Positions 8,933 through 46,079 are shown, counted from the first letter of the stretch. The stretch is 46,079 nucleotides of DNA from Parasitella parasitica NRRL 2501 (GCA_025201805.1 MU619302.1:125893-171971); one strand, 5' to 3'. The notes: generated from the sequence alone by a model not told the origin. Translations and numbers: made by a program.

Positions 8933-9117
8933 TGGATACCCCCCTCTCCCCCCTTTCTCTCTATTTTTTTTTCTTCTTCTATTATGAATAAAAGAAATTC
9001 TAGAGTGATTACTAGGTAATAATACAATGGAATTAATTTGTCAAGAAATTGTATGCAAAAAGAGACTAATGATAGAGTAGTTTTACTCAATCACATGTAT
9101 ATGTTAGAACAGCCCTT

Positions 9118-10225
9118 GGTATTGTTTCAGATTTGGAAGAATATATTTTACTTATAGATGAAGTTGTGTAAAAATAAATTTTGAGGCCGTATTATACTGT
9201 CTTTTCAGCTATCGATTCATATTGAGACATACCCAAGTTACGTATTGGGATGATGTTTTGCTCCTCAATTGAAAATAAGTGGTGCACTCAGTTTCAGCAA
9301 CAAAATAGGCTGTAGATTTAATCTCAGCAGTGTGTTTCCATTTGGCCCAAACCAAAATCAAGAAATTTTTGCATACTTCATTGCTAGATACCTCAAGGAA
9401 TTATTAGGTATATTGGATATGCGTATTAAATGTTTTATAACAAAACCTAAATTCTGCATTTAACCATGTAAATTACAAGGCTGTAAAAAGATCTTTTTTT
9501 ATTACCAATTTTCAAATATTCAAAAAACGCCTTTTTTGATAGTTTTTGAGTGATAACAAGCATATTTTGAAATCATTTGGCTCTATAAAGTTGATCAAAC
9601 AAATCAGCATGTCAATACCTACACATCAATACTTTATTTACAACTGTAGCTTTATTACATCTGCCAAAAATCAAAATCTTGTCTCGACTAAAATGAATCT
9701 ACAATTTTCCGGTCCTATGTCTAGAGGGCCAAAATGAAGCCATTCAAAAGGGTAAAAATCAATTCCGTTTTTCGAGATTTTTTCGCTCAAAAATTGGTAT
9801 TTTTTGACCAAACAAAAACCTTTCGGTAGCTATGTTGTAGCTCTATTTTGGTATTTCTATACCATGTATCTTTATATACCGTTTATTGCTCTAAAAGCGA
9901 TGAAAATAAATTAAGCCTCTGCTAAAAACATATGCAAAAATATTTTTTTCTACATATCTATCTAAAAACTTATACATCTATTAGAGAATCAAATTTCAAA
10001 AAGATCTTAATAAAAACTCAAGCCAAAGTGTCTTAGTGGTTTGTCGAGAAACAGGCTGACCAAATTTACCGTAAAAAGACAAAATTGGCTTAAGCTTGTC
10101 GAATTCGAGCTTGACTACGACATATTCAATACCAGTAGCTGTACCAAAACGTGCCTTACTACATTACTTAAGAACTTGAACTTGATTTAATTGCAAAATT
10201 TGGTACTTGTTATAGGAATATATGC
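9118..10225. repeat. Copy 1 of a diverged ~1-kb non-coding AT-rich direct repeat
   Basis: Aligns by eye with 10597-11596. Shared blocks: tcagctatcgattcatatt (9205/10685), gttttgctcctcaattga, caacaaaataggct, gccattcaaaagggtaaaaa, gctcaaaaattggtatt, gcctctgctaaaaacatatg. Confidence 0.85.
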
Positions 10226-14900: not shown

Positions 14901-17900
14901 ATAACACACTACTGGCAATCCCAGTGTTTGTTTATACATACTAACTCTTTTGTTATGCAGACGTCAAAGTGCATGAAAATAGACAGATTGAGCCCATGTC
15001 TAGTATATTTGATATATCGTATGAAATGAATGGACCGTTGCCATTTTACCATCCAGACCATCTCATTCATTATATCATGTGGGGCAAAATGGACCTGGTT
15101 CATGATGTTTTGATCTCGTTAAACAATTTCTTTAAGCAATTTGTAGACGACGAAGAGAATACCATCAATGAATTTCCACCTCTTTCTTTTTCCAAGATGC
15201 TGAAGCTTCAAAATGTAATTTGTAGGTGCTGTATGCTGTTTGGATATTAACCACCATCCCCCCCCTTTTTTTTTTATGTAGAATAAACCAAACAAGAGTG
15301 CAAAGCAAGAATACAATCGATTATTCAAAGAAGATGACGATGACACAGAGAATAGTAGCAAGATGTAACTATGAGGCGTATCAACACTTGGCTGTAACGG
15401 CTAATATTTTTGCATTAGTCAAGACGATAGTGATGACGGTGTTCGATTGCTAACGACAAACGAAGCCAAAAACCTTGCACATTGTCTCAAAGTAAAGGTT
15501 TTGCCTGGCTTGAATGAAAACGAAAGAACTCACCTGATTGCTATGGTGGATACCATTGTTGAGGTATGTTGGTGGGGGGGGGGGAGGAGAGGGTGGTAAA
15601 AACATAATAATAGGTGACTTGGGCTGATAACCAGAAAAGATTGCTAGCCAAGGTGAATCACTGGATGAGAATGGTGCTCGGTTCACGGCATTGCTAGAGA
15701 ACCACTTTCATTTAAACAAGTCGCTACCGCAAGATCAACGACAGATGCAGCTGGAATGTCGGGACTTTGTTTGGGCTTTGCATAGTCAATCACAGGACTT
15801 GCTGTTGGAGAGATGCATACGACTTTGCGATAATAAACTTGTATGGGAAGATGCTCGTCATTTAGGTCTTTTCGTATGGTTGCAAAAGATTGATGTTGTG
15901 GTAAAGACATTCATTACATGCACAGCGAACTATTTCTGACACTCTTGCACTATCAACTAGAGAGACCAAATGTCCAACATTGCAAGAAACATTTATCTGT
16001 CCAAATCCAGTGAATCCAGAGATCCTGTGGATTGCACGTTATTTTACTTGGCTTTGCGAAAAAAGACGCTATTAGAAGGTTTATGGAAAACCGCTTCCTC
16101 TCACAAAGAACAAGCAGCCATGAGAAAGTTTTTGGCGAATGATTTCACTGATCCTCGGTGGCAAAGAGCAGCATCAAAAAATGCATTTGCATTGCTTGGA
16201 AAGCAAAGATTTGGTAAGTTTGCAAAGCTACCACAGCTGTCCATGACTAATAGCTATGATATAGAGTACGCTGCGGCGTTCTTTTTGTTGGCTGATAAAG
16301 TAAAGGATGCTGTCAGTGTTGTCTTGAAAAATATGAAAGACTATCAACTGGCGATAGCTATCTGTCGTGTCTATGAAGGTGATGACAGCCTTCTTTTGAA
16401 AGAGATTTTGGAGAACAGCATCATTCCCATGGCAATTGAAAATAACGATAGATGGTTGATAAGCATGGCGTATTGGTTATTGGGTAAACGCCGGGAATCT
16501 GTGCGTGCGATGGTTGTTCCGTTGAGTCAATTCACTGACAAGGATATTGACACTTCTGAAGCTGATTCTGCGGCCGTCGTCCATGATCCCAATGCCTTTA
16601 TCCTGTACCATCATTTAAAAAAAACCCTCGGGCAAGACCAGAAATCCATTGTATCCTACAACATTGAATACGGATTTTCATTGCTGGTATCTAGATCTTA
16701 CGAGCGACTGGGCTGTCCCTTGTTGGCCCTGTACATCCTTACGAGATTTTACATGAAACCACCATCCGCCAATACTGAAACACCTCCACAAGAATCAAGG
16801 CTGGAGAGAGCTCAAGATTTGTTTGGCTCTCCTGGTACAACTGCTTCGCCTGCTCATGCTTCTGATATCTTTGGTAGTGATGATCTACAAAAGCCCTCTC
16901 GTGCATCTGATCTGTTTGCTGATGATGACACTGATTTGTTTGCAGAGCCGCAAAAGCCATCCTATTCTAGCAATCTCTTTGACGACGACAATGACGATTT
17001 ATTCACTACAAAGAAACCTGCGGCCTCCTCTGGGGGTTTATTTGATGATGATGAAGATGATGATAATAACCAAGATTTATATGCAAGCACAAATGTCGCA
17101 ACTGCGACAGTCTCAGAGACAGCAGATGAAGAGTGCATTGACACATCAGAGAAGGAATACGATGGTTTGGATGGCTTTAAAGCATTGCTTGTTATTCGTA
17201 TGCTCCAGGTATGTATTGGCATAGTTTGTACACAAGGCAGTACGCTCATCTATTGGTAGACGTTTTTCCATGCTGCTACTGCGTTATACAATGGATTGCA
17301 ACAACCCGATGATGCGTACGAATGCGTGTATCGCTCTCACTTTTTGAGAAATCGCCAAGCATTGCTAGATCTGGGAGAATCAGTTAAAATTCCACCAGAT
17401 ATCTTTTCGCGCTTGTTAATGGAAAAAAGCATTGAAACGGATGTGTTCCCACTGTATCTGTACATTCTCAACGAAAGCATCCCCAAAGATTTTGACGTTC
17501 ATCAGTTTTTGAGAGCGTTCAAGGTAGGATGTTTTGAGGTGAATGAAATTGCACTCATGCCTCAAGAACTCGATTACGCCACGTTGGTGTTTGTTGAAAA
17601 CTGGACCGAGTAAGTAAACATAACCGCCCCACTCTCCCCCTCCCCTTTCTCCCTTAGAATGATATGCAAGCTCACTCATAAACGTGTGGTGTTGTAGACA
17701 TGTTATCGAAACGTTTCCTATCTGGAACGATTTACGTGCTCGTTATTGCAATCCGGAAACAGCAGCTTCAACAACGCGACAAATCGCTTTGACAACATTC
17801 CTTAGTAGCATCCTCATCGCCTTGCAAGAGCGTCATTACGAAAGCTGTTGGCCGTTGATATACCATTTCAAATTCTTTTTGGAGGCGCTCGGCTCAAATG

Positions 17901-26522: not shown

Positions 26523-27880
26523 ATGACACTCACAATTGATGATGTTGTAACGCATTATGTTCTTTCAAGCCATCCTCGCAATGGTGCCATTATCGATGTA
26601 AAGGATAAAAAATCAGGAGAACTCCGTTTTATTAAAATCAGGCACAGGCTGTCCAAATTCTATGCTGTCAGTCTAGTCGACCCAGCTACATTTGAAGTGT
26701 GGGCAGAAACTCAAGTTAAAAGTGCAACGGCTAGAATCAAACCCATCATTCTTCATTTGGATAATAAAAAGGATACTTCTGTTGAATTGCGGGATACATC
26801 CCGCATTGGTTTTGAATGGTCTTTTACTTGGGAAGGAGAGAAATACAGATGGTAAATTGGTTTTTGTTTATTCAATATCCCATATTCTAAATATTTATAC
26901 CTTTCAATGCAGGGTACGTGAAAGTAGAATGAGTAATTCATTAGAATGTAGAGCTATTCGAAAGACTGGTAAGTGCTGTATTGGACATCTCGATTTTCTG
27001 GCATTCTAAAAACGAAAATTTTTTACACCTAGGTGATATTTGTGTCGCACAGTACTTGCCTCGTATATTGAAGGATGAATACTTTGGCATCTTTTCAGTG
27101 TTGGGGTATAACATGCTTCGCTGCAATCTAACCAAGTCTCGTGAGTTGGAACTGATCATGTTGATGTCTTTAATGACATTGCTTGATAAAGCAAATGATG
27201 GAAGCTGGAAGAGAGACCCAATTAGCAAAGGTGTTCAAGACGATTTGGCCAACGGAAGTAATAGTAATAGTAGTAGCAGCTTTGTATCACCCTCTACGAC
27301 TGCAACTACCAATGATTGCTATGAAGATCCAATTCCTAAAAAGTCTCAGCAAAGGAAGCACAAGGTTGAACTACTAAACGATCAAAAACTACAATGGATG
27401 CTAGAAAAGGATGTGCGCCGATCTCAAAAGCAGATACAGCTTGACCAAAAGCACCAAAAATCATCACTTAGTGCTGGGAATAGCCCTGCTCATACACCAA
27501 AAACTTCGCCCTTACCAACACCATCTACATCAACCAATGTGATAAACACTATCCTATCTCCTCGTCTGGCTCGTCAAAAATCTGCTGCAAACCTTACCAC
27601 TCCATTCAATGTCGCTGATTCTCCTACATCGCCTACATCTTCTAATGAAAGCAGCACAAACAGTGGTGGTGGTCGACTCTCTCGATTGTTCAGCACGCTC
27701 TCACAAGCGAAACAAACAAACGACATGGTTATTATCACCCCTGATGATTCACCTGCTGACGATTTCAACCATTTCTATCATCACCCCAACGATTCTCAAA
27801 CCAAAAAACAGCAGAAGCAGCAGAAGCAAAATCAGCAGCAGCAAAATCAGCAGAAGTTGCAGCGGCAAAGACAACGTCAA

Positions 27881-27946
<66 letters not shown>

Positions 27947-28444
27947 TTACAACAGCAGCAACAGTTACAGCAACTGCAACAACGACTGCTACTGCAACAA
28001 CAGCAGCAGCAGCAGCAAGCTCAAATAGATCAAGAGTATTACGAACAACATCATTTTAGCCTGCCCGCTGGTCAACTCTCCCGATTTGCTAACGAATTTG
28101 GGAATCTATCATTAAGCTCCAACACCTATGATAATCCGCCAAGTCTGCGAAATATTCGCTGGAATGCAGAACCTGTTGAAGTAGCACCTACAACAAACAC
28201 TTACATGTCCCCAAGAGTACCTCAGCAGCAACTGCAGCAGCCGCAATCCTATGCTCACCGCAGCAATAGCAATGGCAGAAGGCCGCATATGCTGAGGGAT
28301 CAGCAGCGAAGATTATCTGCTACAGAGTATCCCATGTACTACAATCCTAACCAACCACAGTATAATTACAATCGATATGCTTCTACTTCAGATTATTATG
28401 CACATCCATGTCATCAGCAACCAGCTTATGATTATTATCAATAA
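26523..28444 (+). CDS. Uncharacterised protein: globular beta-rich N-domain, then Ser/Pro-rich, polyQ and Q/N/Y-rich tail (3 exons)
   Basis: GT-AG introns at ~26852-26912 and ~26969-27032 join EKYRW|VRESRMSNSLECRAIRKT|GDICVAQYLPR; long open last exon; TATA-like tataaata at ~26401. Confidence 0.8.
27808..28020 (+). repeat. CAG/CAA (CAACAG)n polyglutamine-coding repeat
   Basis: Directly visible within the 26523-28444 CDS. Confidence 0.9.
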
Positions 28445-30390: not shown

Positions 30391-31086
30391 TTGTAAATAT
30401 TTTGTATTGACTTAAAAAGAACAGAGGTTTTCAATGTAGTACTCACCACAAGCATGGTTCTCTTGAATAAGATACAGGAAGAAAAATTTGCTTGTTTCTT
30501 GTAACTTTTGTTCTTTTCCTTCATTAGATGCGCTAATATTTTTATTGCGCACATCGTTTGGGTTTCGTTTCGTCATGGTGAGCATCACAACAACTTGGCT
30601 CGTCACCTTGTCGGTGAAAATAGTAGTCCATGAAAAAAGGGGTGTTACCTCTCACAATTTGGAAAGAGAAGGCACTAGGATTAGCTTTAGACATACAAGT
30701 CGTTGACAAGAATGATCAACGATTAATAAATGAAAAAAATAACACACGAAAGGCCAATTGCTTGTTGGACTTTTTATGTTGAGACTCGCGCCCCATACTC
30801 ACTCGGCAGGTTTAATCGCATAAATGCAAGAGGAACAAGCTCTTATTAGTGTATGTCTCTTTTTTTTTATTATTTATTTAAATAGATAGATAGTATAGTG
30901 AGTACAGACTTTTTTATTATCAAAAATAGTGTCAGTATAAGTGGGAAAAGATATGAGAATGAAAAATGGTGTAAGGGAATAGAAAGATTAAAGTATATGC
31001 TTAATAGTTATGGCACTATTAGTTTAAAATAAACTAAGGAATAATATTAAATAAATAAACAGATGTTGACAATCATGTTTATATTT

Positions 31087-32766
31087 TTAATGGTCGGCAA
31101 CGCGGACATCGGCATCGTTAGCAATATTCTTGACTTCGGCGTCGTTAGCAACATTGTGGACAGTGTTCTTGGCCTTGACAGAAACACCGCTGACATCAAC
31201 AGTGCCACGACGTTGATGGCTGGCAACACCAACTTTNNNNNNNNNNNNNNNNNNNNNNNNNNNNNNNNNNNNNNNNNNNNNNNNNNNNNNNNNNNNNNNN
31301 NNNNNNNNNNNNNNNNNNNNNNNNNNNNNNNNNNNNNNNNNNNNNNNNNNNNNNNNNNNNNNNNNNNNNNNNNNNNNNNNNNNNNNNNNNNNNNNNNNNN
31401 NNNNNNNNNNNNNNNNNNNNNNNNNNNNNNNNNNNNNNNNNNNNNNNNNNNNNNNNNNNNNNNNNNNNNNNNNNNNNNNNNNNNNNNNNNNNNNNNNNNN
31501 NNNNNNNNNNNNNNNNNNNNNNNNNNNNNNNNNNNNNNNNNNNNNNNNNNNNNNNNNNNNNNNNNNNNNNNNNNNNNNNNNNNNNNNNNNNNNNNNNNNN
31601 NNNNNNNNNNNNNNNNNNNNNNNNNNNNNNNNNNNNNNNNNNNNNNNNNNNNNNNNNNNNNNNNNNNNNNNNNNNNNNNNNNNNNNNNNNNNNNNNNNNN
31701 NNNNNNNNNNNNNNNNNNNNNNNNNNNNNNNNNNNNNNNNNNNNNNNNNNNNNNNNNNNNNNNNNNNNNNNNNNNNNNNNNNNNNNNNNNNNNNNNNNNN
31801 NNNNNNNNNNNNNNNNNNNNNNNNNNNNNNNNNNNNNNNNNNNNNNNNNNNNNNNNNNNNNNNNNNNNNNNNNNNNNNNNNNNNNNNNNNNNNNNNNNNN
31901 NNNNNNACTACTGCAAGACCACGGCGGGCAACACGGACATTGGGATCATTAGCAATATTCTTGACTTCGGCATCGTTAGCAACATTGCTGACGGTATTCT
32001 TGGTGGTAACCTTAACGTTGCTGGCGTTAACAAGAGAACGCTTTTTGTTTTTACAGGGGCAATCTTCGTTGTCACCACCTTCGTTGTCGCCACCTTCGTT
32101 GTCACCGCCTTCGTTGTCACCACCTTCGTTATCGCCACCTTCGTTGTCACCACCTTCGTTATCGCCACCTTCGTTATCGCCACCTTCTTCACAGTCTTCA
32201 CCACCTTCGTTATCGCCACCTTCGTTATCGCCACCTTCATTGTCACCACCTTCATTGTCACCACCTTCATTGTCACCACCTTCATTGTCACCACCTTCAT
32301 TGTCACCACCTTCATTGTCACCACCTTCATTGTCACCACCTTCATTGTCACCACCTTCATTGTCACCACCTTCATTGTCACCACCTTCATTGTCACCACC
32401 TTCATTGTCACCACCTTCATTGTCACCACCTTCTTCACAGTCTTCACCATCATCATTGCCGCCACCATTATGGTCACCACCATTATGATCACCGCCATGT
32501 GCGTCACACCATGCTCTTTCTGCGTCAGAGAGGATGTTGATTTGCAGGCAATTGAGGACATCCTTGACTTGCAAATTATTAAGGAGGTTGGAAGCAGTGT
32601 TATCAGCATCGACGTTGGTGTCAGTGACTTTAGCAACAGAGCGACGTTGAACAGCGTTAAGGGCACCTTCGACGGCGTTCAAAGAGTTCTCAGCGTACAA
32701 AGAACGAGCAGAGACGGAAGCAACAATGGTTGCAACAAGACCAAGAGGAATAAATTTCATATGCAT
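31087..32766 (-). CDS. Secreted Kex2-processed repeat precursor A: signal peptide, (EGGDN)n spacer, tandem ~37-aa Val/Asn modules; partly in an N-gap
   Basis: Signal peptide [18 protein letters not shown]; dibasic sites QRR, KKR, ARR, QRR each precede a module; near-identical modules lie on both sides of the 31237-31906 gap; TATA-like element at ~32950. Confidence 0.85.
31237..31906. other. Assembly gap inside the repeat precursor A gene (other gaps: 1847-2056, 4049-4208, 12072-12081, 18521-18530, 36929-36938)
   Basis: Runs of N; most abut homopolymers, but this one is flanked by tandem coding repeats. Confidence 0.99.
32066..32430 (-). repeat. 15-bp tandem repeat encoding (EGGDN)n, about 15 + 8 units split by GEDCEE
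   Basis: Directly visible (ttcattgtcaccacc)n on the plus strand. Confidence 0.95.
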
Positions 32767-35287
32767 TTTGTACTTTTTTTTGATGTTGTCTAGTTGATGG
32801 GAAAAAAAAGGATTTCTGTATGAGTATTAGTAACCACAACTTATGATATTCAGATAGATGTACAAACCTCTATGGTTTATTAGATGTAAAGAAGATGATT
32901 ATTAAATGTAGAATTAAAACGAAAAGGAATTGACAATTGAAAGGGCTACTTTTATACTAAAATTCCATAGTTGGTTTCTCTGATCTTAACCTAGCTGTGG
33001 GTCGGGCTCACTCTATCTTGCTTTCTTTATTCTCTTCTCTATGCAGTGTTTCCCTTAAAACAACTCCTAGTGCTATATGGTGCATAAAAACTCCTTAGTA
33101 TAGCTAATTCTTATTTCCCAAATGGTTTCTGATTCCGCAAATCATAAGCTAGAGTTTGAAAGGGGGCATATAAGCACATGGTAATTTAAAAAGCTTGCAT
33201 CTTGTACTCTCTATAGCCGAAATGGAAATAAATAAACAAAAATCTACGTACATCAGACCGCAGTGATTTGCTAAATGATCATGCATCATGTAGTATAAAC
33301 CAGAATGAGTGCGGTCCTAAAGATAGATGTAGAGCTCATGCATCGGAAGGAATGGTTGGAAAAAAGTGACAGATACTGTGTGTAACAAATATAGCTGTAT
33401 GCAACAGGCGATCTACTTTCTTTGTTGTATGATAGACACACAAGGTAGTGCTCCCCAGCAGGCCTTACTTGTAGTTCACTGGTACGAGATACAACAAGAA
33501 ACTGTATCTTGCCACATCCAAATTCAAAGACTAGTAACAAGACCAAAAAAAAAAAAAGGCAGCTTCAGGAGTAGTATGTAAGAGTTGTTTGTTTACACAA
33601 ACACCCACAGGTCATGACAACAGTTCGTGAAGATCAATGTACGATTTTTCTATCTGCACAAAACTAAAAAGAAAAAAAAAAAAGGCAACGTTCTTTTTGT
33701 ATCTGTAGTGTATGTTTGATCATGGAAAATACCTAAAATCAAGAAAATGTCATGTATCTGGGTAACCATCGCTTGGATATTATGTGCCGTGCGCATGCGC
33801 TAACCAAGGACAATGAATATGAAAAACATAGTAGCACTTGACAGTATCATATAGCTGTCTACCAGATTAAATACACATATTATATGTCATCGTTGATACT
33901 CTGTAACATTAACGTGAATCCCTATTCTACATGGCTGTAATCCCTGCGTACAGGACATATAGATTGGCGAGGCACGTCTCCCTCTCTTCTTTGTGCATCT
34001 TGGGACGGATGATGATGGCTATCCTACTCAGCCAACGCTGTTTTTTTTTTTATTTCTTTGTCTGTCTGATGCATTAACAATTATAAAAAATAAAAGAAGA
34101 TCGAAATTGGCAATTTTCCATATATATCAAATGCAATTTACGCATGCACAGGGGAAAGGGGAAGTCTTGGGCTTTATAATATTATTTATAAATTGTACAC
34201 AATCGAAATAACAAGGTTCCATAAGATGAAATATCGACCAGCTTGGCCAATTGTGAAATATTTGACAACAATTGCTATGGTTTATTTGGTTTCATTAGAC
34301 AGCTGCGCAGTAAAAACGAATTCATCTATTCTTTTGTTGAATAAAAAGAAGAGACAGACAGCACCATCATGTACTCTTTCTCGTCTCCTTTCCCTCCTCT
34401 TTCTGTCTCCTTTTCTTAACACACCGAGTTTTGTTATTTTAGACTGTACATAGTAATATTCGCTTTTATCCTGTTTGATTTTCCCCTCTTTTTGTTTGTC
34501 AAACCAAGACGATGTTGTGAAACAAAATTGAAATAAAGAAAGTTGAAATTTTATCAAAATGTCATATGTGTTTGTTTATATTTCTATGAATATTCTTTGT
34601 TTAAAGCGCACATATACATGTATACTGGGAAGGTCAAGGGATATTCCAGGGAAGATCGTATCAGCTAAACGGCGGCACATCTGTACAACACTGTACGTGC
34701 ATGTAGTAGCATACATCACTTTCTTTGTTGGGACATTCCATTTCCGTCGTTTTTCCACTATCAGCTGAATCAACAACACTGTGAAAGGAGATATTATATA
34801 TAATGCAAAGAAACAATAATAAAGATACTATCGTGTAGTTGTATACGATGGCTGTCATTTTACTTTTTTGAATGTCGATCTTGGTCATGTGAATTCTTCT
34901 ATTTGTTAAGGCACACCTACTATTAGTGTTATACGCTTAGCATGTGGTGGTCATGAAATGCGCTTTTGTAGCTTTACAGTCTCATATTCCAAGATTGCCA
35001 ATGTTTGTATATCGTCTATTATAAAATAAAATAATTTTACTACAAAAATCAAGTTGCAAAAGTATGCACATATTGTGAGATTCAAAACAAGGAAGATCCC
35101 GCTGATAGACGTAAGCATCGAATAACATGTACTATACTGTATTCGTATACTCTATATATGTCATAATAAGTTTATTATTACAATAATAAAAATCTTTATT
35201 GATTAAAATGTGTATTTGAAATGATTAAAGTCGATAGAAAATGAATATAGTTATTGTTTAGTGATAAATGCAATAAGAGAAAATAGT

Positions 35288-36202
35288 TTAGATGAGGGCA
35301 TCAGTAAGTCCACCACGGTTGGATCCCTCTCCATCAGCATCACCAAGTACAAGGTCTCCAAGTGGAACACCCTGTAGGATACCTGAGCGCTTCATCATGT
35401 CACTTTTTGTCATTTGCTCATCAGCTTCTTCTTCATCCTCATCTTCATCTTCTTCGTATTCACGACGAGTAAGCTCTTCTTCATCGTCCTCATCCTCATC
35501 TTCATCTTCTTCATATTCACGACGAGTAAGCTCTTCTTCATCGTCCTCATCCTCATCTTCATCTTCTTCATATTCACGACGAGTAAGCTCCTCTTCATCG
35601 TCTTCATCCTCATCTTCATCTTCTTCGTATTCACGACGAGTAAGCTCCTCTTCGTCATCCTCATCTTCGTCCTCATCTTCCTCATATTCACGACGAGTGA
35701 GCTCCTCCTCCTCATCTTCTTCATTTTCTTCCTCATCTTCTTTGTTTGCAAGCTCCTCTGCAGCAGTACGACGCATCACCTTGCTGGCACTACTTTCATT
35801 GACTTCGTTTTCGTCGGCCTCTTCCTCATCAGCTTCATTTTCATTTTCATCAGCTTCATTTTCATTTTCATCAGCTTCCTCTTCATCAGCTTCATTCTCG
35901 TCCTCATCAGCTTCATTCTCGTCCTCTTCTTCTTCGTCAGGCTCATTCTCACTACGGCGAGCGTAATACATACTAGAACGACGGCGAATAGCATCAGCGA
36001 CCTTTCTACGAGACAGGACGCTACGCTTGGATGCAACAGTTGCATGAAGGTTATTGAGAACATTATGAACCTGAGCGTTATTGCCAATATTAGAGGCAGT
36101 ATCCTGAGCATCCACTTGAACATTGGTAGCTCTGACAGTGTCAGCAACAACAGATGCTACAGCAGCAGCAAGTAAACCGAGAGAAAGGAATTTGATTTGC
36201 AT
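35288..36202 (-). CDS. Secreted Kex2-processed repeat precursor B: one Val/Asn module plus tandem hyper-acidic peptides (304 aa, intronless)
   Basis: Signal peptide MQIKFLSLGLLAAAVASVVA; at least 10 KR/RR sites; four identical EYEEDEDEDEDDEEELT-RR units; TATATAAA ~70 bp upstream. Confidence 0.9.
   Translation of the reverse strand: MQIKFLSLGLLAAAVASVVADTVRATNVQVDAQDTASNIGNNAQVHNVLNNLHATVASKRSVLSRRKVADAIRRRSSMYYARRSENEPDEEEEDENEADEDENEADEEEADENENEADENENEADEEEADENEVNESSASKVMRRTAAEELANKEDEEENEEDEEEELTRREYEEDEDEDEDDEEELTRREYEEDEDEDEDDEEELTRREYEEDEDEDEDDEEELTRREYEEDEDEDEDDEEELTRREYEEDEDEDEEEADEQMTKSDMMKRSGILQGVPLGDLVLGDADGEGSNRGGLTDALI
35441..35705 (-). repeat. 57-bp tandem repeat (19-aa unit EYEEDEDEDEDDEEELTRR)
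   Basis: ttcacgacgagt recurs every 57 bp; differences among the four full units are synonymous. Confidence 0.95.
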
Positions 36203-37482
36203 GGTGATTGTTGTGTTATTATTATTGTTATATGAGTATAAAAATGAAGAATCAATGCAGATGGCATCTCTTTATATACTCGGTGTATAGGCTCTAATGT
36301 ACAGCGGTTTGATATACAATAACAAAAGGAGATTACAACACACACAAAAGAGTGCGAGTTGTGTATTAGCGCAATAGAGTCGAAGAATTGTATAATAATC
36401 ATGCGCTTAAGACGTTCAAGCATTTTGACGTGCAGCAACATATACATGTATATGTATACAGTGAGAACACTGCAATGGTCATGCCCCTCTTCCGGTTGTA
36501 CAACAAACCGAATTGGCTCCTTGTAGATAACACAGCCTCTAGGTGAAATGAGATGGCATCTATTTTAATATCGACTCTTTCCATTCGAATTTTGACAAGG
36601 TGTTTAATTGGAGCTTTATTCTGTTTATTACTTTTACAAAACACATGCGCAGTGGTTTTCGATACATGTTTTGTATGTGCATCATGCAAATAACACATTT
36701 ACAATGTACCATTAAAACCAAGCGGTTTTAACACGTTTGGTGTTGATATCATTAGAAGTTTGACAAAATGTATTTGGTGGCATAGCGGTGTATAGCGATC
36801 CCGGAATCAATTATTTTAGCACTAAAACTGTCATGTGGGAACAGTAGCAATCTTAACACTTTCTTCTTCTTGGCTCAAGGAGTGTGTGCATGTTGAATTA
36901 GGCTCACTAACTTTGGCTTTTTTTTTTTNNNNNNNNNNCTGCGAGTTGTGATTTCAGCCAAACAGTCGAAATCATAAATTGGATTATGCATGCGTTCAGA
37001 TCAAGATGTGTTGCTGGTGCATTTCTATATACTACTATCGTCACCTTCTTTGATTAATAATTTTGGCAGATTCATGGAAAAAGTAGTATACAGGTATTAC
37101 AATGTCTGTGCATAAAAAATCAGAGTTTATACTTTTCAACAGACAACTATGGGTATATACATATATAATATCTCCTAACCTACATATAATTCAGTACCTA
37201 GACTCCTTTCTTTGGCTTTTCGCTTCAAAGCCCCTGATTTCTTGCTACATGCAAAAGTACGAGTAAATCAATAAACAAATAAACAGGACGACGATCCTTC
37301 CTATTTATATAGCCTATCTCGTGATATGAAATGCAATGATCTGGATCCACAAAGCAGCAAGTTCTGATTAGATAATAAAGTTTATGCAAAGACACATGAG
37401 TACGTGTATTCCATCATACAAATATATGATCCTTCTAAAAATATAACCTCCAGCTTTATTTTGCATAGTCGCCACTTTTTGT

Positions 37483-41028: not shown

Positions 41029-44000
41029 TCACAACATTGTATGGACATGATCTTCATCGATACGTTTTGAAATATCGAGTCGGATACCGGCCAATACTGC
41101 TGCTGTGGTGAAGAGTGTGCGGTCAAATACAGTGCGAAAATGGGATCTCCAAATGTTGGCCAAGGTAATGAATACGATGACCGACGCTGGTACCCCATTT
41201 CGTTGACTGTACCGAATGTTGTAAAAATCAAACGATCTAATTGCCAGGATGATGTCGGAAATGGTGACAGTTGGCCAGAGAAACTCAAATATCACAGCCT
41301 GCCAAACTGATGCTTTGGCAGGGCAGTCAAACAAAAAGTGTTCACTGGAATCAACTGAGGAGGAGCAGATCATGCAAAGGTTGGAAGGATGGAGTTCCGG
41401 AAAGATACGGTTTAAACGGGCTTTGTGAGGGATGCAGTTGTTGATAAAGCGGTAGACTACATTTCTCTGTACCATCGTTAGACATAAACTCCAAAACAAT
41501 TGCCAGTGGGTGGACGCGATGGAAGACAAGTATGCTGGGGCGACAGTTGCGGAAGCACAGGCTTGTCGAAATGTCTTGGTAGTAATTTTAGTGACAAGAC
41601 CGACGTCTTGGAAGACTTCTAGCTGTTGAACAAAAGGCGAGAACAAAACTGGAGGTGGAGCATCTATTGGCGAGCCAGACGAATCCGAAGGCAGGCATAA
41701 TGGCAGAAAGAAGGTTTGAAGTTGTAGCTCACCTGATTGAATTCCTTGGAATATCTTTTTAGGTGCCTGCTTCCAGTGACGAAGAGTTGGGTCCTGCCAG
41801 TCTTTCCAATGAAGGAACCTACGATCAGGGTTGTATTGGAAGACATTAGCTACAGTCATCTCCTTCATTTTACTAGGGATTTGAAAGGAGTTGGACCTAT
41901 TTGGGTAGAAGACGGCAAGGAGAGGCAACACTAGCCCGGTGTTGTGGTTGATGGACACAGAGTCATAGTTGCGTGGAAGGGCATCAATGCACCGGTACAG
42001 AATGTCTATGGTGGAGATTCTATTCTTGCGTGTAAAGGTCTTACGCGTAGTTGGAAACAGCAGAGGAATTTGGTGGAATTCAGTGCGATTATGGTTTTGG
42101 ACGTGTTGAATGAGCATATTAATCAATGGATCCGTATCGGTCGAGGCCGAGGAAGTAGTGACTAATGGCTGCCCCCAACGAAAGTAAAGCGCCATGTATT
42201 GCGCAGGCACGTCTAGGACTCCAAGTCCACCTTGGTTCTTGGGCAAGGTCCATGTACTCCAGGGAATAGCGGGGAAGATGCCTCGTCGGAGGAATTGAAT
42301 CATGACACTAGTGATCTTGTGGAGGTCCTGTTGTGTAAGAGGGGTCACTCGAAGGATGTACCAGCATTTAGACAGGAGCAAGGTGTTGACCACAGTAGCT
42401 CTTCCTACAACTGACAATGAACGGGTAGTATGCAGCGTGGTGGCCGCCTTCAGCTTGTCGACAATCATGGTAATATGATTCGTCCGTTGGACTGTGCTCT
42501 GAATCAGAGGGAAGCCAAGGTAGACGATAGGAGCCTCATCGTGTCTCGTGTGGAGCTTGTGAATATGCATTTCTTCCAGTGGATGTTGCCAGTAGTTCCA
42601 GGTATCACGGCCAGACAGAGAGAAGGCTTCGACTTTGTTGTAATTGAACTTAGCGTTGGATGCCCTACAGAACAGGCCCATGTAGTACCGCAAGAGACGG
42701 AGATCAGCTCTATCGTGAACGAACACAAGAGCATCGTCAGCATATGCCAGCACTTTCGTTTGCATAGGCGGAACTGAAGTGGAAGCAATGGTGGAGGGAT
42801 GACGATGGAAGGTATATCCTGAGAAGTCCGTATCAGTGAGAATACCTTGAAGAAAAGGTTCAAAGGCTAAATCATAACATATACATGATAGAGGATCGCC
42901 CTGTTTGAAGCCTCTTAATTTGGGTATTGCCTCAGTAAAATAGCCATTGATGTTGATTTTGATCGTATTGAGCGCCATTAGGTTGTAAATGCACTGGATG
43001 ATGGTCTCGGGGAAGCCATAATGATTCAAAACCAGCTTGAAGAATGTTAGGTTAACGCGGTCATAGGCTTTTTCTTGATCTAACAATAAGCCTATATCTT
43101 TATCCAAGGTGGCAGTGCCTGTCTGCTGTTCAGCGATGTCATATTGACGTTGGGCATCTTCCATAATGAGTTGACAGCGGAGGCCATTCTCAGCAATGTA
43201 CTTGCCAGGGACGAAGCCAATTTGATTGCTGTTGATCAATTTCTTAGAAACCTCCATCATGCGTCGATTGAGGATACGAGTGAAGTATTTGTAATCACAA
43301 TTCGCCAGACTTAGGGGCCGATAATTCTTCATGTCCGAGGGGTCACCTTTCTTTGGGAGCAAAGTCATAATAGATTGATTCCAAGAATCAGGGAAGAGGC
43401 CCTTATCAAGAGCATCATTGAAGACAGTGGTCAAAAGTTCTTGATACGGAGGGAAGCGCATGACAAGATTGAGAACTTCGTACGGTAAGCCATCAGATCC
43501 AGGGCTGGAGTGCCGAGGAGACGATTTAAAGCCCTCTAAGATGTCCTCAAAATCAATCGGCGTCGTGAGCACTTCATGATCATCGGAGGTCAGCTTGAGT
43601 GCAGAAGGAATAGACCTAAGTAGCAACTCGATAGCAATGTAGTCCAGACGATCAGGTGTAAAAAGCTGTGAGTAAAAGGATGTGGCTATCTCCTGCATCC
43701 TGGATTGATCAGTGCAAAGGTCTTGGGTGACTGGGTCCCGTAACTCTGCAATGCTTCGTTGTTGTTCTCGTATGGTAGCAGAGCATTTGAGATATCCAGC
43801 GGATTTCTCCCCGTTCTCACGCCAATGCTTACCAGCTTTGAGGATTTCGATTTCGGCCAATGAGTCTTGTAAAGATCCAAGTTGCGTCTCAATGGTATCC
43901 AGTATTTCAAAATACAACCCACGGGTTTTCTTCAAACGATACATCCGATTGCGCTTCTTTTGCAGGTGTTTGATCTGTTGTTTGCGCCAATTGTTGTCCT

Positions 44001-44976
44001 GTAGCTGGAATGCTTTTGTAAACAGTTTGACTTCGGCTTTGACCCAATCCCAGGATTGTTGAGGGGTGGAGAAAGATTGTATGCTGTTAAATTCGTCCAA
44101 GTTGGAGTGCAAATGTGCCGCCAAGGCAGAACGATATTCAGGTCGGCTTGCAAGAAATGGATTAGCTTTCCAGGCACCTGGCCCTCTGCTGTATTGGTCT
44201 GTATACTGGAAAGAGATACCTAGTAGGGCATGATCGGTCCACTTGGTGGAAAGAAACTGCTGCTTTAAATTGTTGACTTTGTAATGGTCAGAAGAGCTAC
44301 AAAAGATGAAATCGAGGATGGATGATGAGTCTTTTGACTTCCAAGTAATCTGCTTTTGGTCCCGAAAGCAATCTACATAGAGGTTGTCTAGTAAAGAGAG
44401 CCATTCTGGAGGAGCAGATGTTAAGGTGCCATCCGGCCGACAATGGTTCTCATAGCTGTAATTAAAGTCGCCCATGATGAGAACTGGAGACCGTTGATTG
44501 TGGAGTGTGCGGTTGATTAAAGGCATGGCCAAGAGTGTGGAGTAAAAGGCGGAACGCTCGGAGTGGGTGTTGGAGCGACCATAAATATTGAGTAAAGTTG
44601 CAATGTTGGTGGGTGGAGTAGATGTTGAATCATTCTCTGTTGGTACTGTTGAAGTGAGTTGAATGTTTGCTAAGATAAAACGACCACTGTCGATACCATC
44701 TTGTAGAATATTAATTGAGTATTTGTTGTTAAGGACGACTATGCCACAATGAGGCGTCCAATGGCTGGAATTGGGGCGGTTGTGGATGTTGAATTGCATA
44801 TTGAATTGATCGATAGTGTCTTGAGTGTCAGCGTGGGTTTCCTGCAATACCAGAATGTCAAATTCTAAGGTACGGAGGTAACGGATAAATTTTTTTCTTG
44901 TGTTTAAATCTGATGTCTTTTTTAGGCCACGGCAGTTTAGGGTGGCAATGGATATACGGTGTTGGTTGTTAATCAT
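41029..44976 (-). CDS. LINE ORF2: AP endonuclease, reverse transcriptase, zf-RVT (1315 aa, intact)
   Basis: IATLNCRGL, LVLQETH, IMGDFN, LDFIF, TDH (APE); SPGSDGL, NYRPLSL, QIGF, LDQEKAYDRV, RGFKQGDPLS, YADD, YLG (RT); CMIC...EHFLFDC. Confidence 0.96.
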   Translation of the reverse strand: MINNQHRISIATLNCRGLKKTSDLNTRKKFIRYLRTLEFDILVLQETHADTQDTIDQFNMQFNIHNRPNSSHWTPHCGIVVLNNKYSINILQDGIDSGRFILANIQLTSTVPTENDSTSTPPTNIATLLNIYGRSNTHSERSAFYSTLLAMPLINRTLHNQRSPVLIMGDFNYSYENHCRPDGTLTSAPPEWLSLLDNLYVDCFRDQKQITWKSKDSSSILDFIFCSSSDHYKVNNLKQQFLSTKWTDHALLGISFQYTDQYSRGPGAWKANPFLASRPEYRSALAAHLHSNLDEFNSIQSFSTPQQSWDWVKAEVKLFTKAFQLQDNNWRKQQIKHLQKKRNRMYRLKKTRGLYFEILDTIETQLGSLQDSLAEIEILKAGKHWRENGEKSAGYLKCSATIREQQRSIAELRDPVTQDLCTDQSRMQEIATSFYSQLFTPDRLDYIAIELLLRSIPSALKLTSDDHEVLTTPIDFEDILEGFKSSPRHSSPGSDGLPYEVLNLVMRFPPYQELLTTVFNDALDKGLFPDSWNQSIMTLLPKKGDPSDMKNYRPLSLANCDYKYFTRILNRRMMEVSKKLINSNQIGFVPGKYIAENGLRCQLIMEDAQRQYDIAEQQTGTATLDKDIGLLLDQEKAYDRVNLTFFKLVLNHYGFPETIIQCIYNLMALNTIKININGYFTEAIPKLRGFKQGDPLSCICYDLAFEPFLQGILTDTDFSGYTFHRHPSTIASTSVPPMQTKVLAYADDALVFVHDRADLRLLRYYMGLFCRASNAKFNYNKVEAFSLSGRDTWNYWQHPLEEMHIHKLHTRHDEAPIVYLGFPLIQSTVQRTNHITMIVDKLKAATTLHTTRSLSVVGRATVVNTLLLSKCWYILRVTPLTQQDLHKITSVMIQFLRRGIFPAIPWSTWTLPKNQGGLGVLDVPAQYMALYFRWGQPLVTTSSASTDTDPLINMLIQHVQNHNRTEFHQIPLLFPTTRKTFTRKNRISTIDILYRCIDALPRNYDSVSINHNTGLVLPLLAVFYPNRSNSFQIPSKMKEMTVANVFQYNPDRRFLHWKDWQDPTLRHWKQAPKKIFQGIQSGELQLQTFFLPLCLPSDSSGSPIDAPPPVLFSPFVQQLEVFQDVGLVTKITTKTFRQACASATVAPAYLSSIASTHWQLFWSLCLTMVQRNVVYRFINNCIPHKARLNRIFPELHPSNLCMICSSSVDSSEHFLFDCPAKASVWQAVIFEFLWPTVTISDIILAIRSFDFYNIRYSQRNGVPASVIVFITLANIWRSHFRTVFDRTLFTTAAVLAGIRLDISKRIDEDHVHTML

Positions 44977-44978
44977 AA

Positions 44979-46079
44979 TTATAAATTGTTAGAGTTATTG
45001 GTGGAGGCTTCCGAGATTTTCAGGGCTAGATCTCGGGCTCGTGTGTCCATTTCTTGGCGGTGTGCTTCAGCAGTCAGTTTACGACTAACACTAACGTCTC
45101 CGTCCAGGGAGGTTTTATGGGTTTTAATGAGAGGAGAGTCCTCATCAAAGGATGGTTGTCTAGTAAGTTCTTTGCCAACAGATGATGGAGGCAATGCATT
45201 GGTCAAGGTACTACCTGGGGTAATCCCCGTGGTAGGAGGTGCATCTCCGGTCACCGTGGTAGGAGAACCAGGAGGATTGGGTTTATTAACAAAAGATTCA
45301 TGTTCTCCGTTACGGATGGGAGGAGAAGGAGTCAAAATGACAGCAGCCGAGGAATTGGCCACAATAGTGTCTTTAGGAAGAGACGTTTGAGTCTCATACA
45401 TCAGTGTATCTGAATCAGTCGATCTCTGCATGGCTTGCTCAGGGCCAGAGGCAGCAGATGGAGGAACAGCCAAAGTGCGTTCACTCATCTTCGTGTCAGC
45501 ATCCCTAGGCGTGACAACGGCTTGCTCAAGGCGGCTGCCAACTCCCTTGGAAGATGTTGAAGAAGTGTCTCTTCCCTTACCTTTGTTGCTGGTGCGAGTG
45601 TTCGAAGTGGGCTTCTTTTCCGCTGGCTTCTCTCAACAATACGCACCTTGTTGGCGTCATTAAGGCGAGGACAATTGCGCGCGATGTGACCATGTAGATT
45701 ACAATGATGACAGGTTATGTGCTTCTTATATTCAGGGCAATCAGCACGGCAGTGCCCAGGCTGTTGGCAGATGCGACAGAATTCTGGCATGGAATCCCAT
45801 TGCGCCAAAACATGACGATAGTACCCGTCATCCTCTTCCCAAGGAATGACGCGGGTCAATTCTTGATACTTGTGGTAACCATCGCATTTGGATGAAGAAG
45901 TACCATGTGGATGATCCGTGGACAAACAAACATTTTCAACAGTTCTCGGTTTCGTCTGATTGAGGGTGGCATAGCCCTTACCATGAAAGATACCGTTGAC
46001 CTGGGTGATGCCTAGATCAAGAACTTCACCATAAAAGGAAAGAATTCTCTTCATGTCCTGCATGACCAAGCGGGCAGGA
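44979..46079 (-). CDS. LINE ORF1 (gag-like, two CCHC zinc knuckles), 5'-partial, frameshifted at ~45630
   Basis: CRICQQPGHCRADC and CHHCNLHGHIARNC; the reading continues in another frame (KPAEKKPTSNT...MSERTLAVPP) to TAA at 44979. Confidence 0.85.

What the first reader, a model, noticed from the sequence alone, without database searches (positions are those of the whole stretch)
31087..36202. Tandem pair of secreted Kex2-processed precursors sharing a ~37-aa amyloid-like Val/Asn module: candidate repellent/functional-amyloid surface system in a Mucorales fungus
Seen: two co-oriented genes with related signal peptides ([18 protein letters not shown] / MQIKFLSLGLLAAAVASVVA). The same module is seen four times, each starting at a signal or dibasic cleavage site: [112 protein letters not shown] (gene A) and DTVRATNVQVDAQDTASNIGNNAQVHNVLNNLHATVAS (gene B). 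The module alternates Val and polar residues and has an internal 9-residue pseudo-repeat with aligned Asn pairs (NVAND/NIAND), the pattern of beta-arch/Asn-ladder amyloids such as curli and HET-s. Established: Ustilago maydis Rep1 is a Kex2-cleaved repeat precursor whose peptides form amyloid-like surface coats. Canonical 8-Cys hydrophobins are, to my knowledge, essentially a Dikarya feature. Inference: these genes make a self-assembling coat for aerial hyphae, sporangia or spores. A could be the bulk subunit and B a nucleator or modifier, with the acidic tracts keeping the precursors soluble until cleavage. I do not recognise a described family.
Basis: partly seen in the sequence, partly recalled or inferred. 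Interest (0 to 1): 0.9.

Follow-up and report, generated by a model that had tools for sequence, protein, structure and literature searches.

The report
Mucor-family secreted Val/Asn peptide precursors
Two neighbouring, transcribed genes of the mould Parasitica parasitica (Mucorales) encode secreted precursors that probably release a conserved 37-residue Val/Asn-rich peptide; the family is undescribed, found only in Mucor-like moulds, and may be a surface coat, but that role is untested.

Summary
Gene A (31087-32766, minus strand, broken by the N gap) and gene B (35288-36202, minus strand) both start with a signal peptide. They carry a gapless 37-residue Val/Asn module that begins at the signal-peptide cut or a dibasic site and usually ends at one.

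A profile built without gene A scores its three modules at 33-46 bits, against 13.5 at most for shuffles. The genome is Parasitella parasitica. It holds five such genes in two clusters.

A profile search of 1.84 billion proteins found 32 clusters. All named ones are hypothetical proteins of Mucor, Parasitella, Gilbertella or Backusella, plus doubtful Rhizopus contigs. The order B-then-A is kept in Gilbertella. Mucor mucedo has a gene with at least nine modules.

A public run covers only the two genes, not the 2.1 kb between them, and shows a GT..AG intron in gene A's 5' UTR, so both genes are transcribed. A contig runs in frame from 31236 into the gap and encodes part of a further module.

So this is an undescribed family of Kex2-type repeat precursors. 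The amyloid or hydrophobin-substitute reading is only weakly hinted (beta-type periodicity, no helix periodicity) and every structure prediction was uninformative.

The parts
32868..33063 (-). Gene A 5' UTR exon (upstream limit approximate)
   Evidence: The RNA-run contigs cover the bin 32867-33063 and join across the intron.
32816..32867 (-). Gene A 5' UTR intron, 52 nt, GT..AG on the minus strand. A minor alternative acceptor makes it 78 nt (32790-32867).
   Evidence: Joints 32815->32868 (contig depth 2086) and 32789->32868 (depth 135), with ends CT..AC on the plus strand. The bases were checked.
32707..32766 (-). Gene A signal peptide (20 aa, [10 protein letters not shown]...)
   Evidence: The same N-terminus is found in orthologs P0022, P0028 and P0031.
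32641..32706 (-). Gene A short pro-region ending in QRR
   Evidence: It is conserved in P0022.
32527..32640 (-). Module A1 (38 aa). No dibasic site follows it, so it stays joined to the spacer.
   Evidence: 46.1 bits against the independent profile; boundaries.
32038..32526 (-). Spacer: Cys-flanked Gly/Asp/Asn/Glu-rich tract with about 24 copies of a 15-nt (GGDNE) repeat, ending in KKR
   Evidence: Tandem repeat at 32064-32433, period 15, 24.3 copies. Translation. The same spacer type is in ortholog P0022.
31927..32037 (-). Module A2 (37 aa), between KKR and RR
   Evidence: (32.6 bits).
31909..31926 (-). RR site plus the first four residues (GLAV) of a further module that runs into the gap
   Evidence: GL-type module starts are seen in homologs.
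31237..31906 (.). Assembly gap (N run, length estimated). It hides at least most of one more module.
   Evidence: (loose end at 31236).
31207..31236 (-). End of the hidden module (KVGVAS) plus an HQRR site
   Evidence: The loose end continues it in frame.
31096..31206 (-). Module A3 (37 aa), 70% identical to A2
   Evidence: (36.6 bits).
31087..31095 (-). Last two residues (DH) and the stop codon of gene A
36143..36202 (-). Gene B signal peptide (20 aa, MQIKFLSLGLL...)
   Evidence: It is nearly identical in about 20 homologs.
36029..36142 (-). Module B1 (38 aa), directly after the signal peptide and followed by KR
   Evidence: (37.0 bits).
35954..36028 (-). Basic linker with four dibasic sites. 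The core RRKVADAIRRR is conserved across type-B proteins.
   Evidence: Compare P0001, P0006, P0009-P0013 and P0038.
35768..35953 (-). First acidic segment (ENEPDE/ENEADE type), ending in the conserved ...NESSxSKxxRR
   Evidence: The same ending is in P0001-P0004, P0006, P0010 and P0038.
35393..35767 (-). Second acidic segment with five 19-aa (57-nt) repeats, each holding an RR site
   Evidence: Tandem repeat at 35433-35742, period 57, 5.4 copies; dibasic sites.
35288..35392 (-). KR site, 32-aa Gly/Leu-rich C-terminal peptide, and the stop codon
   Evidence: The tail is conserved in P0033, P0006, P0011, P0009, P0012 and P0038.

Best explanation
The locus holds two members of an undescribed secreted prepro-protein family of the Kex2-processed repeat protein (KEP) kind. 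The named members come from Mucor and close relatives.

Proposed course of events:
1. The proteins enter the ER through a signal peptide.
2. A kexin-type protease in the late secretory pathway cuts at the conserved KR/RR sites, and a carboxypeptidase trims the basic residues.
3. This releases 37-38-residue Val/Asn/Thr-rich peptides: at least three from gene A, plus one module that stays joined to a ~160-residue acidic Gly-rich tail. Gene B yields one module, together with acidic pro-pieces and a Gly/Leu-rich C-terminal peptide.
4. The acidic tracts act as soluble pro-regions.

My most likely function: the peptide is a beta-structured building block laid down in bulk in or on the wall of hyphae or sporangial structures, working like the repellents of Ustilago maydis.

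Shown: the genes, the module, its conservation and boundaries, synteny, transcription and splicing.
Inferred: secretion and cleavage.
Speculative: self-assembly and a surface role.

I put about 0.8 on the processed-precursor part and about 0.35 on the whole statement including the structural role.
For: - The module is real and of fixed length. 27 modules from 4 genera align without a single gap over 37 columns, with T15 invariant and V10, N21, N30 and V36 at >=90%.
- The boundaries sit at signal-peptide or dibasic sites in most of 38 modules.
- In the M. mucedo gene, at least 9 modules follow each other at 39-42-residue spacing, most of them separated only by RR or KR.
- Kexin P-domains are at C3:74005 and C27:67085.
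- Transcription: run X1 covers only 31094-31290, 31882-33063 and 35231-36215 and has zero depth over 33064-35230. It shows GT..AG joints in gene A's 5' UTR. Contig depths are about 2800-9400 on gene A and about 95-140 on gene B; the tool warns that depth cannot rank genes.
- The family is small and lineage-restricted: 32 clusters among 1.84e9 representatives, and 5 genes with 7 assembled modules in this genome.
- The order type B then type A is kept in Gilbertella, and a three-gene array is present in M. mucedo.
- Selection is purifying but relaxed: between two P. parasitica assemblies the module has dN/dS 0.32 at dS 0.56, against 0.16 for a neighbouring housekeeping gene.
- Beta rather than helix: hydrophobicity power peaks at periods 2.25 (z 5.8) and 4.5 (z 5.3), and period 3.6 is depleted (z -3.7). 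Composition is N 17%, V 17%, almost no aromatic residues and almost no Pro.
- The architecture parallels Rep1: a signal peptide, 12 repeats, KEX2 cleavage into 10 peptides of 34-53 aa plus one product of 229 aa, and amyloid fibrils on aerial hyphae (PMC3133707).
Against: - There is no direct evidence of secretion, cleavage, assembly or location.
- The module is not hydrophobic overall (GRAVY -0.49 to 0.53, mean -0.04) and its net charge varies from -4 to +7. An amphipathic film-former is therefore not obvious.
- AF2 gave a pLDDT-60 helix for the single-module protein and a pLDDT-40 coil for a five-module protein.
- The beta-helix neighbours of the ESM Atlas model have TM 0.29-0.43 on a model of pLDDT 0.38.
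- Ten of 38 modules lack a dibasic site at their C-side.
- The growth stage of the RNA sample is unknown.
- HsbA proteins already explain part of surface hydrophobicity in Mucor lusitanicus (PMC13537970).
Confidence: 0.35

Rival explanations
1. The released 37-mers are diffusible signalling peptides (pheromone- or quorum-like), as proposed for most KEPs. The multi-copy precursors serve dosage, as in yeast alpha-factor.
For: The KEP architecture is classically linked to alpha-type pheromones, and surveys propose signalling roles for KEPs of early-diverging fungi (PMC6339444). The core positions are conserved across genera. Selection is purifying.
Against: - Copies within one precursor differ strongly: A1 against A2/A3 is about 27-30% identical, and the median pairwise identity is 38%.
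- The conserved residues are Val, Asn, Thr and Gly. That is a fold-type pattern rather than a charged or aromatic receptor epitope.
- At 37 aa the peptide is longer than the 9-24 aa class typical of pheromone-like KEPs.
- Net charge is not conserved.
- Mucorales use trisporoids as sex signals (stated in PMC6339444).
Confidence: 0.2
2. The peptides are antagonistic: antimicrobial, or host-directed in the mycoparasitic interaction of Parasitella. The acidic pro-pieces neutralise them until cleavage, as in many defence-peptide precursors.
For: Anionic pro-regions next to released peptides are typical of defence-peptide precursors (general knowledge). Three paralogs on C34 have net charge +3 to +5. 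An earlier first-reader note reads that trio as cationic peptides (s1-783525). The genes are highly transcribed.
Against: The window's own modules are neutral or acidic, -2 to +1. dN/dS of 0.32 shows no arms-race signal. The family also occurs in non-parasitic Mucor, Gilbertella and Backusella. There is no amphipathic-helix periodicity and no disulfide scaffold.
Confidence: 0.1
3. The acidic repeat tracts, (GGDNE)n in A and ENEPDE/EDEDE in B, are the working parts. They would be cation- or mineral-binding wall-matrix polypeptides, for example controlling the calcium oxalate crystals known on Mucor and Gilbertella sporangia. The Val/Asn module would be only a targeting or anchoring element.
For: The acidic tracts make up most of both proteins and are kept in orthologs, including the conserved motifs ...RRSENEPDEEE... 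and ...NESSxSKxxRR. Their nonsynonymous rate is low (dN 0.094; the ratio of 0.07 is unreliable because dS is saturated at about 1.3 and the repeats align uncertainly). Calcium oxalate spines on the sporangia of these genera are from my own knowledge (Urbanus 1978; Whitney and Arnott 1986-88, not retrievable here; one search found nothing usable).
Against: One paralog (P0008, 71 aa) has a signal peptide, a module and a basic end only, with no acidic tract, and is conserved in both P. parasitica assemblies. The M. mucedo and Gilbertella multi-module genes have little or no acidic spacer. The element common to all members is therefore the module.
Confidence: 0.1
4. The proteins are secreted or wall-bound intrinsically disordered polypeptides that are not cleaved at most dibasic sites. 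The module would be a repeat of an uncut protein.
For: AF2 and ESM models are low-confidence or disordered. Cleavage has not been shown.
Against: The exact coincidence of module edges with KR/RR in four genera, modules spaced by nothing but RR or KR, and a module that starts at the signal-peptide site are hard to explain without processing.
Confidence: 0.08

Closest known systems
Ustilago maydis Rep1 repellent precursor
   Same: Both have a signal peptide and a repeated peptide of similar size separated by KEX2-type sites. Both give one large product as well as the small ones: 229 aa in Rep1, and module A1 plus spacer (~200 aa) here. Both are expressed in a filamentous fungus in which hydrophobins are dispensable or missing (PMC3133707; PMC13514795).
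   Different: No sequence relation was found: the profile search returned only proteins of this family, and every named one is from Mucor-like moulds. The phylum is different. The peptides here are Val/Asn-rich and close to neutral in hydropathy. Amyloid formation, wall location and an aerial-growth phenotype are shown for Rep1 and untested here. Type-B genes have one module plus long acidic tracts, which Rep1 lacks.
Kex2-processed repeat proteins (KEPs) as surveyed across fungi
   Same: The defining architecture is the same: an ER signal peptide plus repeats separated by dibasic sites. Surveys counted 357 KEPs in 39 Mucoromycota strains, 8 of them in P. parasitica GCA_000938895.1 (PMC7329392).
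   Different: KEP is an architectural class, not a homologous family. This peptide family is not named or described in the surveys' text or in the supplement text held here. At 37 aa the peptide is longer than the commonest 9-24 aa class. Single-module type-B members would not meet a repeat criterion through the module.
Class I/II hydrophobins
   Same: The proposed role is the same: small secreted proteins, made in quantity, that coat aerial structures.
   Different: There is no 8-Cys pattern (0-1 Cys per module). There is no PF01185 or PF06766 match to these proteins or anywhere in the genome. The products would be released by proteolysis from a polyprotein.
Beta-solenoid functional amyloids (curli CsgA repeats, HET-s 218-289)
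   Same: Both have short pseudo-repeats with conserved Asn positions (N21 and N30, nine residues apart), Gly/Asn turns, alternating hydrophobic residues and no helix periodicity.
   Different: There is no Pfam match to Curlin_rpt, HET-s or any other family at E<=10. The repeat period (9) and length (37) differ. No structural model of usable confidence was obtained.

Membership tests
Kex2-processed repeat proteins (KEP, architectural class) | N-terminal ER signal peptide | tested here: met
   By inspection only, since no SignalP was available: Met and Lys, then a 14-16-residue hydrophobic core, then V-S-A or V-V-A before the cut. The segment is conserved in about 30 homologs.
Kex2-processed repeat proteins (KEP, architectural class) | Repeated peptide units separated by dibasic (KR/RR) sites | tested here: met
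   Gene A has at least 4 modules with QRR, KKR, RR and HQRR at their edges. Gene B has one module followed by KR, plus five 19-aa acidic repeats each holding RR. M. mucedo has a relative with at least 9 modules.
Kex2-processed repeat proteins (KEP, architectural class) | A kexin-type convertase is present in the organism | tested here: met
   PF01483 P_proprotein matches of 104 and 58 bits at two loci of G000.
Kex2-processed repeat proteins (KEP, architectural class) | Actual cleavage and release of the peptides | not testable with these tools
   This needs mass spectrometry of secreted and wall fractions.
Repellents (U. maydis Rep1) | Sequence homology to Rep1 repeats | tested here: not met
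   The profile search of 1.84e9 proteins returned only proteins of this family, and every named one is from Mucor-like moulds.
Repellents (U. maydis Rep1) | Peptides form amphipathic amyloid fibrils in the wall and make aerial hyphae hydrophobic | not testable with these tools
   There are only indirect hints. The oligomer prediction gave no verdict.
Hydrophobins | Eight conserved Cys in the hydrophobin pattern, or a Pfam PF01185/PF06766 match | tested here: not met
   Modules have 0-1 Cys and there is no Pfam hit.
Curli / HET-s type amyloid repeats | Match to the family profiles (Curlin_rpt, HET-s_218-289) | tested here: not met
   No Pfam family at E<=10 for either gene.
Curli / HET-s type amyloid repeats | Stacked beta-arch or beta-solenoid structure | tested here: inconclusive
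   AF2 gave pLDDT 59.8 (helix) and 40.0 (coil). A beta-type periodicity is present. The neighbours of the ESM Atlas model are beta-helices, but at TM<0.45.
RTX nonapeptide beta-roll | GGxGxDxUx consensus repeats | tested here: not met
   There is a nine-residue periodicity, but the consensus is h-h-N-x-x-x-V-x-x with no GGxGxD. There is no HemolysinCabind hit.

The most novel reading that the evidence does not exclude
The 37-residue Val/Asn module is a new kind of fungal functional amyloid, or a beta-solenoid building block about two rungs long. It would be released in bulk from gene A-type polyproteins and seeded or modified by gene B-type single-module proteins, and it would do in Mucor-like moulds what hydrophobins and repellents do in Dikarya: coat aerial hyphae, sporangiophores or spores.
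Probability: 0.17. Interest if true: 0.85.

Novelty: new variant of a known kind. Interest (0 to 1): 0.55.

Why it matters
Mucorales raise hydrophobic aerial sporangiophores and airborne or wettable spores, yet they appear to lack canonical hydrophobins. What coats their surfaces is poorly known. HsbA proteins were linked to surface hydrophobicity only recently.

This family is strongly transcribed, lineage-restricted and completely uncharacterised, and it yields fixed-length beta-prone peptides. That makes it a concrete, testable candidate for such a coat. Orthologs exist in genetically tractable and clinically relevant Mucor circinelloides.

Even if the coat idea fails, the family adds to the fungal KEP repertoire:
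- a conserved tandem of single-module and multi-module genes;
- chimeric precursors that also carry a second conserved peptide (the Gly/Leu tail).

It also shows that such genes are often broken or missed in assemblies and annotations because of their repeats.

Tried and rejected
- Pfam scan of both genes at E<=10: nothing.
- AF2 with a 22-row alignment on the 71-aa paralog: a single helix at pLDDT 59.8. I reject it as uninformative, because the helix period is depleted in the sequences.
- AF2 on the five-module P0027 with 9 rows: pLDDT 40, coil. I did not run fold searches on these models, because low-confidence models give meaningless matches.
- Complex prediction, four copies of module A3: no verdict (score 0.02, the alignment was not used). 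This is neither for nor against self-assembly.
- ESM Atlas on P0020: no model and no hit.
- Profile against PDB sequences: one chance hit at E 3.5.
- Word-based protein search with the M. mucedo nine-module ORF: nothing, because the candidates were swamped. The same search with gene A's N-terminus found only P0022.
- Supplement text of the KEP survey searched for module motifs: not found, though the held text may be cut.
- Paper search for homolog accessions: none.
- Exact look-up of the gene B protein in public assemblies, to reach an ungapped copy of gene A: not on record.
- BLASTP of type-B tails against the C25 repeat precursor: nothing with its default composition-adjusted scoring. An alignment without that adjustment, with a shuffle control, then showed similarity for four homologs but not for the window's own gene B tail.
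- Weak A4-profile hit on C11 (E 0.28): treated as chance.
- Reading the Rhizopus-labelled homologs as evidence for Rhizopus: rejected. They sit on contigs of 0.4-1.5 kb, and one shares a 90% cluster with a Mucor circinelloides protein.
The only intron found is in the 5' UTR, so the coding parts were always searched by reference.

Full report
**What is there**

Two ORFs lie on the minus strand.
- Gene A runs from 32766 down to 31087 and is interrupted by the N run at 31237-31906.
- Gene B runs from 36202 down to 35288 (304 aa) and is intact.

Both start with a typical signal-peptide-like segment. Neither matches any Pfam family, even at E<=10.

Gene A reads, in order:
- signal peptide, 32707-32766
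- a short pro-piece ending QRR
- module A1, 32527-32640
- a Cys-flanked tract with about 24 copies of a 15-nt repeat encoding GGDNE, ending KKR, 32038-32526
- module A2, 31927-32037
- RR, then the first four residues of another module
- the gap
- the last six residues of a module, then HQRR
- module A3, 31096-31206
- two residues and the stop codon

Gene B reads, in order:
- signal peptide
- module B1, 36029-36142
- KR and a basic linker with four dibasic sites
- an acidic segment ending ...NESSASKVMRR
- five 19-aa acidic repeats, each holding RR
- KR
- a 32-residue Gly/Leu-rich tail

**Is the module more than chance?**

Yes.
- The B1 segment alone finds three paralogs on another contig (E 5e-12 to 2e-7) and two gene A modules (E 0.006 and 0.03) in a six-frame search of the whole 32.8 Mb genome.
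- A profile built only from single-module proteins, with gene A and gene B left out, scores A1, A2, A3 and B1 at 46.1, 32.6, 36.6 and 37.0 bits. The best of 9000 shuffles of the gene A modules scored 13.5.
- Twenty-seven modules from four genera align over 37 columns without any gap. T15 is invariant, and V10, N21, N30 and V36 are at least 90% conserved.
Across the family it shows as the two conserved Asn nine residues apart and as raised self-similarity at shift 9, although shift 13 is equally raised.

**The gap**

The N run is an estimate, so the apparent 559-aa frame is not evidence.
- Both flanks encode modules on the same strand, and both are covered by contigs of the same RNA-type run.
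- One contig runs on from 31236 into the gap. Its first 30 letters read, in frame, as LQVKNVLNGA, which fits columns 23-32 of the module.
- That 30-mer is nowhere else in the assembly.
- The gap therefore hides at least one further module. No contig bridges it, so continuity is likely but not proven.

**Organism and family**

The 71-aa paralog is letter-identical to KAI8643334.1 of Parasitella parasitica, on a contig of 246,396 nt, which is the length of our contig C34. The window is therefore from P. parasitica (Mucorales).

The genome holds five family genes with seven assembled modules:
- A and B in the window;
- a trio on C34, of 259, 70 and 148 aa. An earlier first-reader note of this scan covers the same trio (s1-783525).

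The 70-aa gene is only a signal peptide, a module and a basic end. The module, not the acidic tract, is therefore the common element.

A profile search of 1.84 billion cluster representatives gave 32 hits (21 at E<=1e-10).
- The named ones are all 'hypothetical' proteins of P. parasitica, Mucor mucedo, M. ambiguus, M. circinelloides, M. bainieri, Gilbertella persicaria and Backusella circina.
- Hits labelled Rhizopus sit on contigs of 0.4-1.5 kb. One shares a 90% cluster with a M. circinelloides protein, so they are probably contamination.

Two architectures recur:
- Type B: MQIKF... signal peptide, one module, a basic linker with the conserved core RRKVADAIRRR, acidic tracts, KR, then a Gly/Leu tail.
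- Type A: [10 protein letters not shown]... signal peptide, a pro-piece, a first module joined to a Gly-rich spacer, then further modules separated only by dibasic sites.

**Boundaries and processing**

Over 38 modules in 30 proteins:
- the N-side is a signal-peptide end (21) or a dibasic site (11);
- the C-side is a dibasic site (24) or the protein end (4);
- most exceptions are the first modules of type-A proteins, which continue into the spacer.

In M. mucedo one gene carries at least nine modules at 39-42-residue spacing, most of them separated only by RR or KR. Kexin-type P-domains are present at two loci of this genome. This is the architecture of Kex2-processed repeat proteins. Cleavage itself is inferred, not shown.

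**Synteny**

- In Gilbertella a single-module gene lies 1.2 kb upstream of the four-module P0019, on the same strand. This is the same order as B then A here.
- In M. mucedo three family genes lie in a row.
- The C34 trio is kept in the second P. parasitica assembly.

**Expression**

One public run of 2019 holds the region.
- Laid on 30700-36600, its contigs cover only 31094-31290, 31882-33063 and 35231-36215. Depth is zero over the 2.1 kb between the genes. That stretch serves as the silent control.
- The run shows two joints, 32815->32868 and 32789->32868, with CT..AC on the plus strand. That is a GT..AG intron of 52 nt (or 78 nt with the alternative acceptor) in gene A's 5' UTR (bases checked).
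- The run is therefore RNA, and both genes are transcribed.
- Contig depths are about 2800-9400 on gene A and about 95-140 on gene B. The tool warns that contig depth cannot rank genes, so I take this only as 'gene A is abundant'.
- The growth stage of the sample is unknown.

**Structure and selection**

- AF2 gave no usable model: pLDDT 59.8 (a helix) for the 71-aa protein and 40.0 (coil) for a five-module protein.
- The four-copy complex job gave no verdict.
- The ESM Atlas's own model of P0019 has only beta-helix or solenoid families as nearest neighbours, but at TM 0.29-0.43 on a model of pLDDT 0.38. This is a hint only.
- From the sequences themselves, hydrophobicity power over the 27 modules peaks at periods 2.25 (z 5.8) and 4.5 (z 5.3), which are harmonics of nine. 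The helix period 3.6 is depleted (z -3.7).
- Composition is 17% Asn and 17% Val, with almost no aromatic residues and almost no Pro.
- GRAVY averages -0.04 and net charge ranges from -4 to +7.
- Between the two P. parasitica assemblies (dS about 0.56) dN/dS is 0.32 for the module, 0.18 for the linker, 0.37 for the signal peptide and 0.16 for the neighbouring pseudouridine synthase gene. This is purifying selection on a pattern, with no arms-race signal.

**Interpretation**

I am fairly sure (about 0.8) that this is an undescribed family of secreted, kexin-processed precursors, found in Mucor and its close relatives, that yield 37-38-residue peptides.

I favour a structural role in bulk (whole statement about 0.35) for these reasons:
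- fixed length;
- conservation of Val, Asn, Thr and Gly rather than charged or aromatic residues;
- strong divergence between copies in one precursor;
- variable copy number (1 to at least 9);
- variable charge;
- abundant transcript.

These features fit a beta-structured building block better than a receptor ligand or a cationic toxin.

The architecture also parallels Rep1 of Ustilago maydis: 12 repeats, KEX2 cleavage into ten peptides of 34-53 aa and one product of 229 aa, and amyloid fibrils on aerial hyphae (PMC3133707).

The context fits as well. No hydrophobin profile matches this genome (weak, because there was no positive control), and three Mucorales surveyed lacked canonical hydrophobins (10.1101/2022.08.19.504535).

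Against this reading, nothing here shows assembly, amphipathicity or a surface location. HsbA proteins already account for part of surface hydrophobicity in Mucor (PMC13537970).

The rivals are signalling peptides (0.2), antagonistic peptides (0.1), acidic cation- or mineral-binding matrix proteins (0.1) and uncut disordered proteins (0.08).

**Comparison with what is known, and novelty**

KEPs are a known architectural class and have been counted in Mucoromycota: 357 in 39 strains, 8 in P. parasitica (PMC7329392; PMC6339444). Neither survey describes this peptide in its text, nor does the supplement text held here. The homolog accessions appear in no paper.

The family fails the membership tests for hydrophobins, curli/HET-s profiles and RTX repeats, and it shows no homology to Rep1.

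I class it as a new variant of a known kind. The new features are:
- a new peptide family within the KEP class;
- a conserved tandem of single-module and multi-module genes;
- chimeric type-B precursors.

- Read laying was given 5901 letters.

Noticed in passing
G000:C25:255132-257577 (L021:1375-1692 and L022:1123-1959): A separate repeat precursor has three ~49-residue units that start KR-DLLGGGLPLVGDLLGG, and a single-copy paralog lies beside it. The Gly/Leu C-terminal tails of several type-B homologs (P0012, P0009, P0030, P0002) resemble this unit well above shuffles (z 5.5-6.7, 0 of 1000). The window's own gene B tail does not (z 1.0). Type-B proteins may therefore be chimeras of two peptide families.
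   Followed up: partly
window 35954-36028 and homologs P0001, P0006, P0009-P0013, P0025, P0038: The basic linker after the type-B module has a core (RRKVADAIRRR and close variants) that is conserved across genera and has the lowest reliably estimated dN/dS of the segments (0.18; the acidic tail's lower ratio is unreliable). This is more than a mere cleavage spacer needs. It may be a sorting or recognition element, or a released hexapeptide.
   Followed up: no
window 41029-44976 (-), also 44979-46069: A 1315-aa ORF carries endonuclease/exonuclease/phosphatase, RVT_1 and zf-RVT domains. It is a LINE-type non-LTR retrotransposon copy about 5 kb upstream of gene B.
   Followed up: no
window 830-1765, 6085-8932, 15970-17259: Ordinary housekeeping genes flank the locus: the G6PD C-terminal domain, Sec39 (two ORFs, probably split by an intron) and the Rav1p C-terminal domain.
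   Followed up: no
P0022, P0023, P0037 ('Rhizopus arrhizus G6F42') and P0032 ('Rhizopus delemar G6F58'): Family members labelled Rhizopus lie on contigs of 398-1535 nt. P0037 shares a 90% cluster with Mucor circinelloides EPB89770.1. These look like Mucor contamination in Rhizopus assemblies.
   Followed up: partly
P0038 (Mucor circinelloides CAO0793063.1, 371 aa): This gene model fuses a complete type-B protein to a second, degenerate-looking type-B copy (the P0016 sequence). M. circinelloides therefore also has tandem type-B duplicates, and one may be decaying.
   Followed up: no
L007 vs L031 (two Parasitella parasitica assemblies): The two assemblies named P. parasitica differ by about 15-24% at the nucleotide level here (dS about 0.56 in a housekeeping gene). 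That is much more than is usual between strains of one species.
   Followed up: partly
window 35768-35953 and homologs: The first acidic segment of type-B proteins ends in a conserved N-E-S sequon (…VNESSxSK..RR), a possible N-glycosylation site just before a dibasic site.
   Followed up: no
window 26981-28444 (+): A 487-aa ORF downstream of gene A has no Pfam match.
   Followed up: no
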